A DNA stretch of 61,563 bases, filler included, from Platydemus manokwari (Eukaryota): assembly GCA_037951405.1 (NCBI GenBank). It is 6 parts of 6 records of this genome, joined end to end, with 100 filler letters (N's around TTAATTAATTAA, not from the genome) between each part and the next. Parts side by side here need not be neighbours in the genome. Positions count along the whole stretch, not along the records: positions 10,627 to 20,087 come from JBBMOY011246652.1; 5 more parts are not named here. One strand, given 5' to 3'. The notes under the pieces were generated by a model, which saw only the letters and a program-made list of their open reading frames with translations, made no database searches and had not been told where the DNA came from. How positions within the stretch are numbered: the stretch's first letter is position 1; each line of letters opens with the position of its first letter. Shown here one piece after another: positions 12,221-18,645 of this stretch. The translations under genes and the position numbers were made by a program.

Positions 12221-13457
12221 TTGGGCTGGCGCATGGATTCGTGCTGTTTTTTACAATTATGAAAAATGCCTACTGATCAAGAATAAAAACCATGCAACAA
12301 ATTCCAAATAACAAAATCAATTTATAAAATTATTAGTAAAAACAAATATCTCAATCTCAATAGACGAGATATTCTCCCTCACAATCGATCATTTCCTTCC
12401 ATTCTTCTGGAAGTTTGTCAATCTTCGTTTTCAAATGTGAAACCAGAAAGTTGACACGCTTGGAGCGGAAAAGATGAAAATCTACTGGAGCTAAGTCGGG
12501 CGAATATAGAGGATGGGGAAGAACTTCCCAGACAAACTCTTCAATAGAGAACTTTGTCATTGTAGCGACTTGAGGCCGAGCATTATCATTATGTAAAACT
12601 ATCTTCTTCTTATTGGTCCTCTTCGCATTGATTGAAGTGTTTAGTGGCTTGAGTTGTTTACAATAAAGTTCAGCATTGATTGTTTGTTTATTGGTAAGAT
12701 TTCGTAATGAATAACACCAATTTGGTCCCACCAAACATACAACAAGATTCGAACGTGGCTGTGGTTGCCTTTCTGGATTTACCCAAGCTTTTGAGTATCA
12801 AATTTACATACAAGCATCATTTTTTATTGCCCGTTACTATCCTGGAAAGGAAATATTGGTGATCTGCTCAGCAGACTGATGACCAACGAATAAAATGAAT
12901 CAATCGAAACACATTGATTTTCGTGACTTTCTTTTAGAAGATGAGGTACCAATGATCCTAGCTTTTGATTTTTTCCCATATTCATGTGATGTCGAAAAAT
13001 AGTGGTGTGATCACAATCCATTGCTTGTCCAAGTACTCGTGTCGATTGACGCGGATCATCATGAACCAATTGGTTCAAACAGCCTTCAGCAAAATAAATA
13101 GGTCGGCCTGACCGAGGTGCATCACTTAAATCAAAGTTTCCACTGTTAAATTTGGAAAACCAATTTATGAGCTGTTTGTTCACTGACTGCCTTTTCTCCA
13201 TAAACGCAACAAATCATTCTGGTTGCTTCTGTAGCATTTAAATGTTGATTAAAATAGAAAAGGAGTAGATGCCGGAAATGTTTATTTTTATCTACCTGAC
13301 ACTCCATTTTAATGAGGGTAATGAAAGCGAAAATTAGACTAAAATGATTTAAATAGATAATTCAGCTGAATGTCTATAACTCAAATCAGTTAAAACAAGA
13401 AGTTGGTGTGTTTTCTGTGCAACAAATAAAATCGCACGATTTCATGCACCAACCCAA
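12221..13457 (-). mobile_element. Full-length inactive mariner (DD34D) transposon, about 1237 bp
   Basis: TIRs TTGGGCTGGCGCATGGATTCGTGC and GCACGATTTCATGCACCAACCCAA, with TA on both sides (12219-20, 13458-59). Transposase from ATG 13307 (MECQVDKNKHFRHLLLFYFN) through WFSKF...PRSGRP, LVPHLL, HNDNARP and YSPDLAPVDFHLFRS to 12357, broken by frameshifts. Confidence 0.95.
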
Positions 13458-15996
13458 TAATGAAAATTTTCATCAGAATAAATAAATTTATCGAAATTAT
13501 TAGCATTTCAAAGAATAATTTTCCAATTTAAAATAACAAGAAGTGAAACTAATCAAAGAGGACTTAAAATGAAGATTCTAATTGGAAAATGGAAATAACT
13601 ATACCGTTACACATAAATAAGAATTAACCAATCCCGGTCACAGAAAATCAATAGATCCAATTGAAACTTGATAAATAAAATATCAAATCAAAACGTGATA
13701 CTGATAAAATAGTTGTAGCTAATAATGATTATCGATTTTGATGTATCATGAGCGAAATTGAACCCACAACTACATTTAAACACATCAAAAATCGTAAAAT
13801 TTGTAACGAAAAATTTTAAATACTGCAGCAATTTATTTCATATCAGATCAGAAAAATTATTTTCATTATAAGAACACAATATAATCGATATTTTAATAAT
13901 CACCTGTCGATATCAGAAGGTGTTGTAATAATGTTGGTTTGATATGAGAATGAATTGATCATTTCGAAGGCACACTGTTAGAAGATTTCAATTAGCTAAT
14001 CAGATGTTTCTCATCTAGAATAGAAATGATAGAAAACGGTATTTTGTTTCCTTGATAACCGTTGACGAAACCATGTGGTTGATGATTGGTTTGTGGTCTC
14101 AGTTCTTATGGTTTGAAAAGTTTTTCACAAGAAAATTGAAAATAATTAATCGATTCAAACAAAAATTAGCTAATAATTAAAATTCAATAACCTCATTTAT
14201 TAATTTATTGATGACAGTGGAACCCTTTACAAACACTTAGTTAGTCTCGAAACCCAATGAGTAAGGAAATACGGAAAATATCTAGTTCCTGTTTTGCACT
14301 TGTGTCCCACTGGAAACGAGTAGACCACAAGGGATTCACTGTTCTCATAGTCCTCTTACATTTGAGATGCAAAAATAAACAAAAAATAAAAAATAAAAAA
14401 CCGTATGAAAATATTTCTGTTTATTGCGACCTTGTCATTTGAGATGTAGCCGTTAAATTTATCATCAAATTATTTTTCATTTAAATCCAACTCCAACAAT
14501 AACAAAATTAATGAAATATTGACGAAAGCACACACATATATTATCTGATAAATATCTATTACAGCCATCTACGATTAATAATTCGTCAGTCAATGTCTGA
14601 GACGAAAATTTCCAACAGCTACGATAGAAGTTCAAGAAAAAATAATTTAAAAATAAGATCAGAATATAAATTATTAAAAATATTATTTCGAGTAAAAAGA
14701 ACTGAAAATAAAGTGCAAATCGAAGAGATGTAACGAAAACAATTAATGGTAAAGAAAGAATCATATAAACTGATAATGATATTAATCTTGTTGTTGTCAT
14801 TACCGATTGTGTCAATCATATTGATCTTATCATTTTTTCTATCATACCGTTGAAACTTGGCCATTTTTACTCCAACTCAATTATCGTTAGATTATATATG
14901 AATGAAAATATGAAAAGATATTAATATGTGATTATCAATCATCAAATGAAAGTGTGAGTGTACATAGTGATTTTATTTCAATATTTTTGACAAATATTAT
15001 CAGAAAATAATAACAATCGACATTAGAATTACTTACACATGATAATCGATGATGTCAAATGGTAATAATGAATTATATATGTATATGATGATGGTCTATC
15101 AATGAATATATTTCAAGATTGTATCTCAATTGACCAATTAGCGCAATCCGATATCATTTCAGATTAAATTCTGTAACAGAATAATCATAATTAATTAAAT
15201 GAAACCAAAACTATCGCTCTGTTTTGTCATAGAAAATAAATATCCAATTACAAAGGATCCGAATAATACATTTCAAAAGGTGAAATAATATTTATTTATT
15301 AGACATTGTTTTTTAAATAATTTAGTCAATAATTCTGATCTCAGTGCCATCATGATATCTAAAATATCATTTATCGACCATAGAACCAATCAATATCTTT
15401 TCAAAGCGATATCACAACATCTATTCTCTCACTGACACTAAACGCCATTACCATGTCAACACGTGTATGTGTGTGTCAATCTAAATAGACAAATCGAATG
15501 TATAATCAAGAAATGATCGAAATAAACCAATATCAGTCATTGCAATTCCAATAAATCAATATTCGACCAAATGAAGTGATATATATATCTTTAACAAATC
15601 GATATTTCGTTTTGAAATAACAGCAAAAATATTGATTAAATGAAAAATAATTAGAAATAAAAAATCGATAATTCAAGTCTCAAATGCGACAGTGGGCATT
15701 CATAAAACACAGAAAAATGAAATCCAAAAATCTAGAATCTCTGTAATTCCACAACGATTCCAACGTTAATAAAACCACCATGGCAACAGCAACAAATGAA
15801 AACCAACAACACAATATCTGATGCCATGTTGCCCTTGCCAACAACAACAACAACAAATCAATCAATCAGTTCTACAGATCGATAAAAATTATCATAAATC
15901 AATACAAAAAAAACAACAAGATCAATATATAAAATCGTCACCATCAAAATATTATCATTATTATTATTATTATTATCATTATTAATAATATTATTA

Positions 15997-16428
15997 TCAA
16001 GCCGAATTGTGATAAAACTGGAAATTAACCAAGCGGTTCAAGTGAAAATATCGAATCAAAAACGATTGCTCAAATATTTCTTCTGGCTGTTGTTGATTGG
16101 AGGAGTAGGACGACGAGGACGACGAGGCGGACGTGGCGGAGGAGGAGGAGGAGAAAAATGGGCGAGTAATTGCCGGTAGAAACGATGGCGGCAGTGGCAT
16201 TGTTGGGTTGTGATGAGGCATTGAAATCGATAATAATATCAATATGTACACCAATGAAATAAGAGCGATAATCAAGAAACTCAAAACAGCCAACAAATAG
16301 TAGCGCCAGTGGGCCCACAGCCACACGAGCACAGTTGTGAGTGGTCTGCAAGGCATAATAATCGAGGAGGTAGTCAAAATGATGATCATATGCCATCCCC
16401 ACCTGATATTAGACCACCTTCTACACCG
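15997..16428 (-). other. In-frame open extension after the PDCD10 UGA (candidate readthrough extension, or 3'UTR ORF)
   Basis: 13 sense codons (16428-16390) join the stop to the 130-aa ORF 15997-16389 in the same frame. Stop context is UGA-CGG. Confidence 0.4.
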
Positions 16429-18645
16429 TCAAGCGGCATCGCGCACAACCAATAGAATCATGTTGGTCTGATTGACAAGCAGATTAGCACTAGCGTAGAC
16501 CTCGGACGGCCTGGAAAAACATGAGATGAAAAATATTGATTATTTAAACGCTCTCCGATCGATCAGGCGATATTGTGGAGCACTTGCTTACTTGTTGTCT
16601 CTGAAAAATGCTTTCAACGTGTTACTGAACCGTTTGGAATATTTGACAAAGTCTCGCTTGGCTTGTTCCAAACTTGTTTTGTGATTGTCTGTGGGCAAAT
16701 GAGTGATCACTTCTGACACACAATCCAACAAGTTTTTGATGGCGCCAGCGATTTCTCTGAAGGGTATATCAAATAAAAATCATTGTTTTTCATAGACTGG
16801 TAAATAGTGATTATAATATTTGTCACATGTTTCCATAGCAACCGCTACAAAAATCACAATTGTTATTACAATCCGATCTAATAATGCAACGAGAATTTAC
16901 ATCGATACAACGAAATATATATAAAAATCAATTGGAATAATGTCTGTGTTGCCAATAGCAACATCAGATAAAATTGGCCCAATTAAATAAAACAAGGCGG
17001 AAAACAATCTCGATATAAGCTACAACAACAATGTTCTTCTCGATAATTGATCTGAGATAAAAATCTATAATTAGCTTCACCGGTTGCTAATAGTTACGCG
17101 TGCTAGACGAAAATTGCGATTGAAGATGAAAATAAATAAGTGGCAAATATTGATTATTGAAACACTGATTAGATAATCGAAAATATTGAAATAATTCCAT
17201 TACAAGACCCCGTGGCAATCGAAATCACATCAGACATGCAGTGTTCAATCGAAAACTCAATCAATAATTCTTGATCGACACAATTGATTGAGAGAAGCAC
17301 TCAACCGTGATGACTTCACACAAATCACTGAGAGGTCAACAATGCAGCAAATCGCAACAAGTACACACCTACACATTTTCACCACAAAACATTGACAATC
17401 ATCGATATGTAATTAGCGTAACCGTTACTGAGAAATCGATTTTCCACACAATCACACACACACTCACAAACACACAAAACAGTGGGCAGACACACACTCG
17501 TTTACAGCCATCGCTACTGGGCAATTTATAACGCACACACCCTCCACACAAATAATCAACCAATATCGCATAACAAATCAATATCCGAAATTACTTAATC
17601 GTTTCGAGGAAACTGCGCCTGTCGCCAATTTCATCCGGAATTCGACTGAGAATCTCTTTCAGTGTATGCGCCTTGCTTTCCAATAAATTGTAGGTCTGCC
17701 TCCTCATATTCCTGACGACACCTGTTATGGGAAGTCGTGTAAAATAGTGACAGATATTGGAGATAAATATATGAGTAGATCGATATCAAATGAGCTCGAA
17801 CAGAGATGTTTGTGACGGACAGAAGTAGCAAGGATTGTAAGGCCACAAATTGTATGCAAAGGGGTGAAATGGCCAGGCCCACTTGAACCACCTTCGGTCC
17901 ACAGACCAATGACTACTGCAGGTATTCGATCAGGAGTGTTTGGTGGTTCCGATTGAACACCAGTGGCGTTGGTAAGGAGAATCATCAAACAAGGAAATGT
18001 TTCGTGATTTAAAAAGAAAAAGAGCATTATGACGTCACCATATCTAAAAGTGCTTCCATTGAATTTATAATTGATTCTGAAACGATGCCAAGATGGATTT
18101 TTGTTGCTTTTCAACAAGTTTAGATTCACCATTTTATAGCACAAAAATAACATTTTTATTCAATTAAACTTATAATTATAATTTTTTATTGCAATTAAAT
18201 TCATTTTAATGAAATAAATGACCAAAAAACAACGAAACCTGTTTCAGCCATTGATGCCATACGTAGAAACGTTTCCGACATATCAACCTCATTTTCCAAA
18301 CCCAGCTTCGTTAGAACACCAATTAAAAAATTTTGAGAAAACCCAGGATATTGTTGTTCAACCTAAATGGTAAAATCATTGAATTTAAGCATGGGCTAGT
18401 AAATGACAAGCGTTATTTAGATAAATTGCATTTGGGTTTAAAAGCAATGAAAAATGCTAAACCTTAGCGAATGATTGCTTTAATGTGTGAGTGTGGCTGA
18501 GACTTTTTTGCTCCAACTAAAATAGTGTTGAAAACATTTATATAAATCCTTGATAAATAGCAAATACTTTTTCAAAAACTGGTTCAAAAATCATTGGAGT
18601 TGCTAATTTGTGGAAAACATTATTATCCCCGTTTGAATTACTCAT
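16429..18645 (-). CDS. PDCD10: Programmed cell death protein 10 / CCM3, 209 aa, 6 exons
   Basis: Exons 18645-18568, 18516-18463, 18362-18239, 17721-17595, 16756-16592 and 16510-16429, all GT-AG and phase-consistent (630 nt). Protein includes [87 protein letters not shown] and VYASANLLVNQTN, collinear with known PDCD10. Confidence 0.96.

What the first reader, a model, noticed from the sequence alone, without database searches (positions are those of the whole stretch)
15997..16510. Candidate stop-codon readthrough producing a membrane-anchored PDCD10/CCM3 isoform
Seen in sequence: the spliced PDCD10 CDS ends GCT-TGA (16431-16429), and the frame then stays open for 143 codons to 15997: RCRRWSNIRWGWHMIIILTTSSIIMPCRPLTTVLVWLWAHWRYYLLAVLSFLIIALISLVYILILLSISMP...(Ser-rich)...HNSA*. 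The stop context is UGA-CGG. About 10 nt downstream a stem can form: GGUGGUCU (16418-16411) with AGACCACU (16347-16340), enclosing GGCAUAUGAUC (16394-16384) paired with GAUUAUUAUGCC (16363-16352); alternatively AGGUGGUC pairs with GACUACCU (16375-16368). Established: UGA followed by C (UGA-CGG, UGA-CUA) plus a 3' stem-loop after a short spacer is the readthrough signal of alphaviruses and several animal genes, and PDCD10 is normally a soluble GCKIII/STRIPAK adaptor. Inference: a minority of about 353-aa product with a transmembrane anchor could tether CCM3 complexes to a membrane. Caveat: the region is relatively GC-rich and partly triplet-repeat derived, and a second frame is also open for 110 codons, so open length alone is weak evidence.
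Basis: partly seen in the sequence, partly recalled or inferred. Interest (0 to 1): 0.8.

Follow-up and report, generated by a model that had tools for sequence, protein, structure and literature searches.

The report
Possible stop-codon readthrough in PDCD10
The PDCD10/CCM3 gene of this unidentified invertebrate ends at a leaky-type stop (UGA-C) followed by an unusually conserved 44-base block and a 143-codon open frame, so it is a credible but unproven candidate for translation past the stop codon.

Summary
PDCD10/CCM3 has five GT-AG exons on the minus strand. It ends at TGA 16431-16429, the same C-terminal position as its orthologues, followed by CGG and 143 stop-free codons to 15997.

For:
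- Frame 0 has 0 stops against about 6 expected (p 5.5e-4 to 8e-3).
- The stretch has exon-like GC, is strongly 3-periodic, and 28% of it is tandem triplet duplication.
- Only one close relative was found, metagenome contig L001. Its third codon positions are 42% diverged and its introns cannot be aligned, yet it keeps TGA-CGG and differs at only 6 of the first 44 bases after the stop.
- Eighty control pairs of other PDCD10 orthologues show no such conservation, so something functional starts at the stop codon.

Against:
- The proposed stem is no better than chance.
- Membrane-like segments are common in translations of this T-rich strand.
- The frame's composition is unlike the gene's own coding sequence.
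- There are no homologues and no RNA data.
- L001 ends 17 codons after the stop.

Verdict: readthrough candidate about 0.4; conserved 3'UTR element plus chance ORF about 0.3; alternative splicing or downstream ORF about 0.2. Membrane anchoring remains speculation.

The parts
18568..18645 (-). PDCD10 exon 1 (ATG at 18645)
   Evidence: GT-AG gene model giving a 191-aa protein
18239..18362 (-). PDCD10 exon 2
   Evidence: Weak Pfam PDCD10_N hit, E 0.032, below the curated cut-off; gene model
17595..17721 (-). PDCD10 exon 3
   Evidence: Pfam PDC10_C hit, E 1.5e-12; gene model
16592..16756 (-). PDCD10 exon 4
   Evidence: Pfam PDC10_C hit. 113 PDCD10 relatives found. Amino-acid sequence 100% identical in L001
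16432..16510 (-). PDCD10 exon 5, coding part (last 26 residues)
   Evidence: One amino-acid change against L001. Ends where other orthologues end
16429..16431 (-). Canonical stop codon TGA, followed by C (UGA-CGG)
   Evidence: Same in DNA run X1 and in relative L001
16385..16428 (-). Conserved 44-nt block directly 3' of the stop
   Evidence: 6/44 differences to L001 against 42% at third codon positions, p 5e-5. Local alignment score 32 against a maximum of 13 in 80 control orthologue pairs
15997..16428 (-). 143-codon in-frame open extension plus its stop (TGA 15999-15997)
   Evidence: Stop depletion p 5.5e-4 to 8e-3. GC 45% against 31% for the piece. 3-periodicity chi2 27-28. No homologues
16210..16314 (-). 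Strongly hydrophobic stretch of the extension (residues 39-73; Kyte-Doolittle 19-residue window up to 3.12)
   Evidence: Not specific: 14 of 25 open runs on this strand reach 1.6
16099..16153 (-). (TCC)n/(GGA)n microsatellite coding the Ser run; length-polymorphic by 3 nt
   Evidence: Tandem Repeats Finder. GGA insertion behind 16137 in run X1
16070..16408 (-). Second open frame (112 codons; ATG at 16396 in a G-rich context, conserved in L001)
   Evidence: No homologues
16411..16418 (-).
   Evidence: Present. The outer two bases differ in L001. Not above chance
16340..16347 (-). It also holds an AG (16347-16346) in phase with the exon-4 donor
   Evidence: The phase is my own reading of the sequence. 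Not covered by L001
15950..15997 (-). (ATA/ATT)n microsatellite that closes all frames right after the extension
15295..15300 (-). First canonical AATAAA downstream of the stop (about 1.13 kb)

Best explanation
The stop codon of PDCD10 in this lineage is a leaky UGA-C stop kept by selection. A minority of ribosomes insert an amino acid at UGA (near-cognate decoding) and continue in frame into 16428-16000. This would make a protein of about 335 aa (191 + 1 + 143) beside the normal 191-aa one.

Shown:
- The canonical stop, its UGA-CGG context and their conservation in a relative.
- An exceptionally conserved 44-nt block that begins at the stop.
- Stop depletion specific to frame 0, and triplet-only repeat evolution of the stretch.

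Inferred:
- That ribosomes actually pass the stop.
- That the whole 143 codons are read.
- That the conserved block is the stimulating signal.

What the tail does is open. Hydrophobic 3'UTR-encoded tails are also known to mark readthrough products for BAG6/GCN1-dependent clearance (PMC10364623), so it could equally be a degron that lowers PDCD10 output.
For: 1. TGA-CGG is in the window, in DNA run X1 and in the diverged relative L001. UGA-CGG/UGA-CUA is the consensus readthrough context of alphaviruses, several plant viruses and coltiviruses (PMC3159437).
2. Window against L001: 34 synonymous and 1 non-synonymous codon changes in 81 codons, third-position divergence 0.42, introns unalignable. 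Yet only 6/44 changes follow the stop (p 5e-5), at all three codon positions. This is the pattern seen 3' of known readthrough stops (PMC3159437).
3. Control: in 80 pairs among 21 other PDCD10 loci, the first 53 nt after the stop score a median of 7 and a maximum of 13. This pair scores 32. Other orthologues use TAA/TAG/TGA with any next base and have 0-59 open codons.
4. Frame 0 has 0 stops against about 6 expected. P is 0.8% (dinucleotide shuffles) and 0.055% (codon-position-preserving shuffles).
5. GC is 45%, like the exons, and drops to 28-30% right at the extension's end.
6. The stretch has the strongest 3-periodicity in the piece, and its phase is coherent over five 72-nt segments.
7. 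28% of the stretch is tandem triplet duplication, against 8% in the coding sequence or shuffles. Period-4 repeats are 0% against 7.5% in neighbouring noncoding DNA.
8. The one length polymorphism seen is 3 nt.
9. No AATAAA/ATTAAA lies between the stop and 15300.
10. Leu codon use resembles that of the coding sequence.
Against: - No RNA, ribosome or peptide evidence. No RNA run holds the locus.
- The relative's contig ends 17 codons after the stop, so conservation of the long frame is unknown.
- Within the 14 comparable codons there are 3 replacements and 2 synonymous changes. That gives dN/dS of about 0.7, so there is no sign of selection on the peptide.
- The frame-0 composition is unlike the gene's coding sequence. 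G at codon position 1 is 11% against 30%. The 143 residues hold no Lys, no Asp and one Gly. The position-specific log-odds is -46.7 bits, the same as out-of-frame PDCD10.
- Ser codons are TCC/TCG from a microsatellite, against AGT in the coding sequence (p 0.002).
- No homologue in Pfam, PDB, the 5.8-billion-protein word search or the Atlas.
- The stem is not above chance.
- Abundant readthrough is reported only in insects and crustaceans, with single-digit counts in C. elegans and human, and readthrough genes tend to be long (PMC5100048). PDCD10 is short, and the organism is not identified.
- A 144-codon open run in intron 2 shows that long noncoding open frames occur here.
Confidence: 0.4

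Rival explanations
1. Noncoding 3'UTR. The 44-nt block is a lineage-specific regulatory element (a protein- or RNA-binding site) that happens to start at the stop. The rest is a pyrimidine-rich patch derived from triplet repeats, and its frame 0 is open by chance. Ribosomes terminate normally.
For: - The strand is A-poor (21% A), so stops are rare.
- 28% of the stretch is triplet-repeat duplication, next to (TCC)n, (ATT)n and (CAA)n microsatellites. Lag-3 self-identity is 0.36-0.39, above that of the real coding sequence at 0.27.
- The composition and Ser codons are un-protein-like.
- No homologues.
- The conserved block shows no excess of synonymous change.
- Another 144-codon open run sits in an intron of the same gene.
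- Membrane-like segments are usual in translations of this strand.
- Readthrough is rare outside Pancrustacea (PMC5100048).
Against: It needs three independent rarities at one spot.
- A fully open frame, with p 5.5e-4 to 8e-3 even given the local composition.
- A post-stop conservation seen in none of 80 control pairs.
- The least common, leakiest stop context, kept at 42% synonymous divergence.

In addition, periodicity remains after masking the tandem triplets (chi2 16, p 0.014), and period-4 repeats are absent.
Confidence: 0.3
2. The stretch is coding but is reached without readthrough.

(a) Alternative 3' splice sites inside the last exon region. The AG at 16404-16403, or the one at 16347-16346, joined to the exon-4 donor (phase 2), both land in frame 0. 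Either would replace the last 26 residues of PDCD10.

(b) A downstream ORF starting at ATG 16396 (frame 2, 108 codons, G-rich start context) or at ATG 16389 (frame 0, 130 codons), translated by reinitiation or from its own transcript.
For: - Both AGs are in the right phase (my own reading).
- The CAG|G at 16405-16402 and both ATGs lie inside the block conserved in L001.
- The periodicity phase puts G at codon position 1 of frame 2, the usual coding signature. Frame 2 scores better than frame 0 in the position-specific model, at -18 against -47 bits.
- The same evidence for frame-preserving evolution as above applies.
Against: - The sequence before the AG at 16404 is purine-rich, unlike the pyrimidine tract before the gene's real exon-5 acceptor.
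- Loss of the last helix would probably destroy the C-terminal domain of PDCD10 (inference).
- Reinitiation after a 191-codon ORF is inefficient in eukaryotes (general knowledge).
- There is no poly(A) signal for an upstream cistron.
- Frame 2 has no homologues either, and its stop count equals expectation (4 against 3.6; composition, stop count).
- Neither route explains why TGA-C itself is kept.
Confidence: 0.2
3. UGA is decoded as selenocysteine, or is a sense codon in this organism.
For: Only the open frame after UGA and a conserved block right behind it. This is loosely reminiscent of the redefinition element behind the UGA of selenoprotein N (my own knowledge).
Against: - No SECIS or any other Rfam family in 14000-16600 on either strand at E up to 1.
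- The UGA sits exactly at the C-terminal end shared with all orthologues.
- PDCD10 is not a known selenoprotein.
- The five exons contain no in-frame UGA.
Confidence: 0.02

Closest known systems
Alphavirus-type (UGA-CGG / UGA-CUA) readthrough signals of alphaviruses, tobra-, peclu-, furo- and pomoviruses and coltiviruses (Firth et al. 2011, PMC3159437)
   Same: - UGA followed by CGG.
- Enhanced conservation, synonymous positions included, directly 3' of the stop.
- A long in-frame extension.
   Different: Those signals have a stem of 10-14 bp starting about 8 nt after the stop, supported by compensatory changes. Here only an 8-9 bp stem with a 10-nt spacer is possible. It is no better than chance, its outer bases differ in the relative, and its 3' arm could not be compared. 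This is also a cellular gene, not a virus.
Conserved readthrough of cellular genes in Drosophila and Anopheles, such as headcase and kelch (PMC5100048, PMC3159437)
   Same: - A leaky stop context kept over evolution.
- A stop-free in-frame region after the stop.
- A low-complexity, fast-diverging extension.
   Different: Those cases rest on multi-species coding signatures (PhyloCSF) and ribosome profiling. Here one relative covers only 17 codons. Readthrough genes there are long regulatory genes, whereas PDCD10 is short. The clade is unidentified and may lie outside Pancrustacea, where readthrough is rare.
Short UGA-CUA(G) readthrough of metabolic enzymes (MDH1, LDHB) giving dual localisation (Stiebler et al. 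2014, listed in the references of PMC5100048; details from my own knowledge)
   Same: The idea that a minor C-terminally extended isoform is sent to another compartment.
   Different: Those extensions are a few residues ending in a peroxisomal signal. This one is 143 residues, hydrophobic and Ser/Pro-rich, with no recognisable targeting motif.
Readthrough mitigation: hydrophobic 3'UTR-encoded tails cleared via BAG6 and GCN1 (PMC10364623; bioRxiv 10.1101/2022.07.20.500724)
   Same: A T-rich region after the stop encodes a strongly hydrophobic tail.
   Different: That pathway concerns accidental readthrough and needs no conserved leaky context. Here the context and the stop-proximal block are conserved.

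Membership tests
PDCD10/CCM3 | PDCD10 C-terminal (PF06840) and N-terminal dimerisation (PF20929) domains | tested here: met
   PF06840 hits on exons 3 and 4 (E 1.5e-12 and 2.8e-5). Weak PF20929 hit on exon 2 (E 0.032). 113 PDCD10 relatives found with exon 4.
PDCD10/CCM3 | Canonical C-terminus: the stop lies about 20 residues after the ...SAN.L..QTN... motif | tested here: met
   The window ends at the same spacing as about 28 other orthologues and as L001.
Programmed stop-codon readthrough, UGA-CGG type | UGA followed by C (CGG or CUA) | tested here: met
   TGA-CGG at 16431-16426. Identical in L001 despite 42% third-position divergence.
Programmed stop-codon readthrough, UGA-CGG type | Extended 3' stem (10 bp or more) about 8 nt after the stop, supported by covariation | tested here: inconclusive
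   Only an 8-9 bp stem. Fold z-score -0.33. Such stems occur at 43-48% of control positions. No covariation in the 56 nt shared with L001. The 3' arm lies beyond L001's end.
Programmed stop-codon readthrough, UGA-CGG type | Enhanced nucleotide conservation directly 3' of the stop | tested here: met
   6/44 differences against 42% at synonymous-type sites, p 5e-5. Score 32 against a maximum of 13 in 80 control pairs.
Programmed stop-codon readthrough, UGA-CGG type | In-frame extension kept open, with a coding signature, in related species | tested here: inconclusive
   Open for all 17 codons visible in L001. dN/dS is about 0.7 on 14 codons. No longer relative found.
Programmed stop-codon readthrough, UGA-CGG type | Extended protein or ribosome footprints beyond the stop | not testable with these tools
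   No RNA run holds the locus. The one run laid (X1) is unspliced DNA contigs.
Selenoprotein (UGA = Sec) | SECIS element in the 3'UTR | tested here: not met
   No Rfam match at E up to 1 in 14000-16600, both strands.
Membrane-anchored protein | Hydrophobic helix of about 20 residues that stands out from background | tested here: inconclusive
   The Kyte-Doolittle 19-residue window reaches 3.12 at residues 48-66, the highest in the piece. However, 14 of 25 open runs of 50 aa or more on this strand exceed 1.6.

The most novel reading that the evidence does not exclude
A non-model invertebrate lineage has evolved programmed UGA-CGG readthrough of PDCD10/CCM3. It would be driven by a conserved 44-nt element that is not the classical stem-loop. 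It would add a 143-residue tail whose Arg/Trp-rich start and hydrophobic core insert into a membrane, tethering a fraction of the GCKIII-kinase/STRIPAK adaptor there.
Probability: 0.12. Interest if true: 0.7.

Novelty: new member of a known kind. Interest (0 to 1): 0.45.

Why it matters
Stop-codon readthrough of cellular genes is well documented in insects but nearly unknown elsewhere. No paper in the searched library links readthrough to PDCD10.

If confirmed, this would be a new cellular case with the virus-like UGA-CGG context and a linear conserved element instead of a stem. It would also give a soluble signalling adaptor a second, probably membrane-bound or unstable, isoform.

The comparative result stands whatever the mechanism: a sharp drop from 42% to 14% divergence exactly at the stop codon, absent in other PDCD10 lineages. 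It marks a functional element worth testing.

Tried and rejected
- RNA evidence: no RNA run holds the locus. The single holder, X1, is unspliced DNA contigs.
- Homology of the extension (frame 0) and of the second frame: nothing in Pfam, the word search of 5.8 billion proteins, the Atlas (recognition values in the range of shuffled sequences) or PDB. The word search only sees proteins of 79-250 aa, so short fragments on small contigs would be missed.
- More close relatives: the search with P0001 found only itself. The JGI metagenome scan gave only orthologues of 69% identity or less. Cluster look-ups gave no useful names except Mytilus.
- Distant full-length orthologue P0030 (L030): TGA-CAA, with only 18 open codons.
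- Stem-loop as signal: rejected as evidence.
- Selenocysteine: no SECIS.
- Plus-strand gene under the extension: all three plus frames have 5-12 stops. The best position-specific score of any frame is still negative.
- Repeats linking the extension to other parts of the piece: none.
- Intron-2 open run (144 codons): no Pfam or PDB match and no periodicity. It was used as a control.
Full report
**The gene and the observation**

The minus strand carries a five-exon PDCD10/CCM3 gene with GT-AG introns: 18645-18568, 18362-18239, 17721-17595, 16756-16592 and 16510-16429. It encodes 191 aa. Pfam PDC10_C matches exons 3 and 4, and PDCD10_N matches exon 2 weakly.

The last exon ends ...VVRDAA, then TGA at 16431-16429. 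About 28 other orthologues collected here end at the same distance from the conserved SAN.L..QTN motif, so this is the canonical stop.

The stop is followed by CGG and 143 sense codons, to TGA at 15999-15997. A second frame is open for 112 codons. The stop is not an assembly slip: a DNA run of the same organism (X1) and a related organism (L001) both have it.

**Is the open frame more than chance?**

- The extension is A-poor on this strand (21% A) and has 45% GC, against 31% for the piece.
- Given that composition, a fully open frame 0 has probability 0.3% (independent bases) or 0.8% (dinucleotide shuffles).
- Keeping the base composition of each codon position gives 0.055%.
- Frames 1 and 2 carry 7 and 4 stops, as expected. 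Frame 0 carries none against about 6 expected.
- On the other side, intron 2 of the same gene holds a 144-codon open run (18159-17728) with no family or PDB match and no periodicity. A scan over many genes will therefore meet chance cases.

**Internal signs of frame-preserving evolution**

- GC is exon-like from exon 4 to the end of the extension and falls to 28-30% exactly at 16000.
- The extension has the strongest 3-periodicity in the piece (chi2 27-28, p about 1e-4). This also holds before the (TCC)n microsatellite, and the phase is the same in five successive 72-nt segments.
- 28% of the extension consists of tandem triplet duplications, against 8% in the true coding sequence and in shuffles. 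Period-4 repeats are absent, although they make up 7.5% of the flanking noncoding DNA.
- After masking the duplications, periodicity persists (p 0.014).
- The only length difference in X1 is a 3-nt insertion in the (TCC)n run.

These points fit a sequence under a reading-frame constraint. A cluster of decaying triplet microsatellites could mimic much of it: lag-3 self-identity is 0.36-0.39, higher than in the real coding sequence.

**Signs against a normal coding sequence**

- In frame 0, G at codon position 1 is 11%, against 30% in PDCD10.
- The 143 residues hold no Lys, no Asp and one Gly, in a genome whose PDCD10 is rich in Lys, Asn and Glu.
- A position-specific model trained on the PDCD10 coding sequence gives -46.7 bits, like the out-of-frame coding sequence. 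The training set is one soluble protein, so this weighs only moderately.
- Ser codons are TCC/TCG rather than AGT (p 0.002), while Leu codons match.
- No homologue was found by any search.

**The comparative result**

A search with exon 4 against 1.84 billion representatives found one close relative, P0001, on a 693-nt ENA metagenome contig (L001).

- Over 81 codons of exons 4-5, the two sequences differ by 34 synonymous and 1 non-synonymous codon changes. Third-position divergence is 0.42.
- The introns cannot be aligned.
- Directly after the stop, divergence drops to 6 changes in 44 nt (p 5e-5). TGA and the next nine bases are identical.
- The changes fall on all codon positions (2, 1, 3). 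Two are synonymous in frame 0 and three codons change the residue. The constraint therefore looks nucleotide-level rather than peptide-level.
- After 44 nt, the alignment breaks at an ATC repeat, where a 3-nt gap fits best. The contig then ends, 17 open codons after the stop.

Control: among 21 other PDCD10 loci (80 pairs with conserved protein and third-position divergence of 0.1 or more), the first 53 nt after the stop give local scores with a median of 7 and a maximum of 13. The window-L001 pair gives 32. In those lineages the stop codon itself varies (TAA, TAG, TGA with any next base), and the open frame after it is 0-59 codons.

The conserved block is therefore specific to the lineage that also has the leaky context and the long frame.

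**The proposed stem and anchor**

- The 102 nt after the stop fold no better than shuffles (z -0.33).
- Uninterrupted stems of 8 bp or more starting 5-13 nt after a point occur at 43-48% of control positions.
- The part shared with L001 shows no covariation, and the outer bases of the 5' arm differ.
- The hydrophobic core (residues 48-66, Kyte-Doolittle 3.12) is the strongest in the piece. However, 14 of 25 open runs on this T-rich strand also look membrane-like.
- Hydrophobic 3'UTR-encoded tails are known to send readthrough products to BAG6/GCN1-dependent clearance (PMC10364623). An anchor is therefore only one of two readings.

**Other routes and other readings**

- No AATAAA/ATTAAA lies between the stop and 15300, so the extension is probably in the mRNA.
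- No SECIS or other Rfam family is present.
- Two AG dinucleotides (16404-16403, inside the conserved block, and 16347-16346) would join the exon-4 donor in frame 0. ATGs at 16396 and 16389 are conserved in L001. Alternative splicing or a downstream ORF therefore cannot be excluded (my own reading).
- The plus strand has 5-12 stops in every frame.

**Weighing**

Readthrough is rare outside insects and crustaceans and favours long genes (PMC5100048), and the organism is unidentified. Against that low prior stand three features that are each rare under the null and that coincide at one codon: the open frame, the conserved post-stop block and the conserved UGA-C.

| Reading | Probability |
|---|---|
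| Readthrough | about 0.4 |
| Conserved UTR element plus chance ORF | about 0.3 |
| Splicing or downstream ORF | about 0.2 |
| Other | remainder |

The membrane-anchor function has no direct support.

**Limits**

There were no RNA data. One relative covers 53 nt after the stop. The length filter of the word search may hide short fragments of the relative's extension.

Noticed in passing
window 12357-13307, minus strand: Remnant of a mariner/Mos1-type transposase, split over three overlapping or frameshifted ORFs. Pfam hits: HTH_48 (E 8.8e-14) and the Transposase_1 partial DDE domain (E 5e-4).
   Followed up: partly
window 17728-18159, minus strand (intron 2 of PDCD10): GC-rich patch (40-44% GC) with a 144-codon open run that ends 7 nt before exon 3. 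It has no Pfam or PDB match and no 3-periodicity. Its origin is unexplained.
   Followed up: partly
L001 (ENA ERZ27257134, contig k141_1029146), 1-693: A metagenome contig from a related organism. The exon-4 protein is 100% identical, with one amino-acid change (Met to Ile) in exon 5. Third-position divergence is 42% and the introns are unalignable. It is the only close relative of this gene in the collections searched.
   Followed up: yes
window 16137; 16848, 16872, 17243: DNA run X1 of the same organism differs by a GGA insertion in the (GGA)n/(TCC)n repeat and by three single-base differences in intron 3. There are none in the exons or in the rest of the extension.
   Followed up: no
window 16396-16394 and 16405-16402, minus strand: Inside the conserved block lie an ATG in a G-rich start context (opening the 108-codon second frame) and a CAG|G that could act as a 3' splice site in phase with exon 4. 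Both are identical in L001.
   Followed up: partly
window 18568-18645 and 18239-18362, minus strand: The gene model gives only 191 aa, and the N-terminal dimerisation domain matches Pfam weakly (E 0.032). Either the N-terminus is shortened in this lineage, or a small exon between 18568 and 18362 was missed.
   Followed up: no
window 15839-15856 and 15950-15997: (CAA)6 and (TAT/ATT)16 microsatellites lie directly downstream of the extension. The latter supplies a run of in-frame stops.
   Followed up: no
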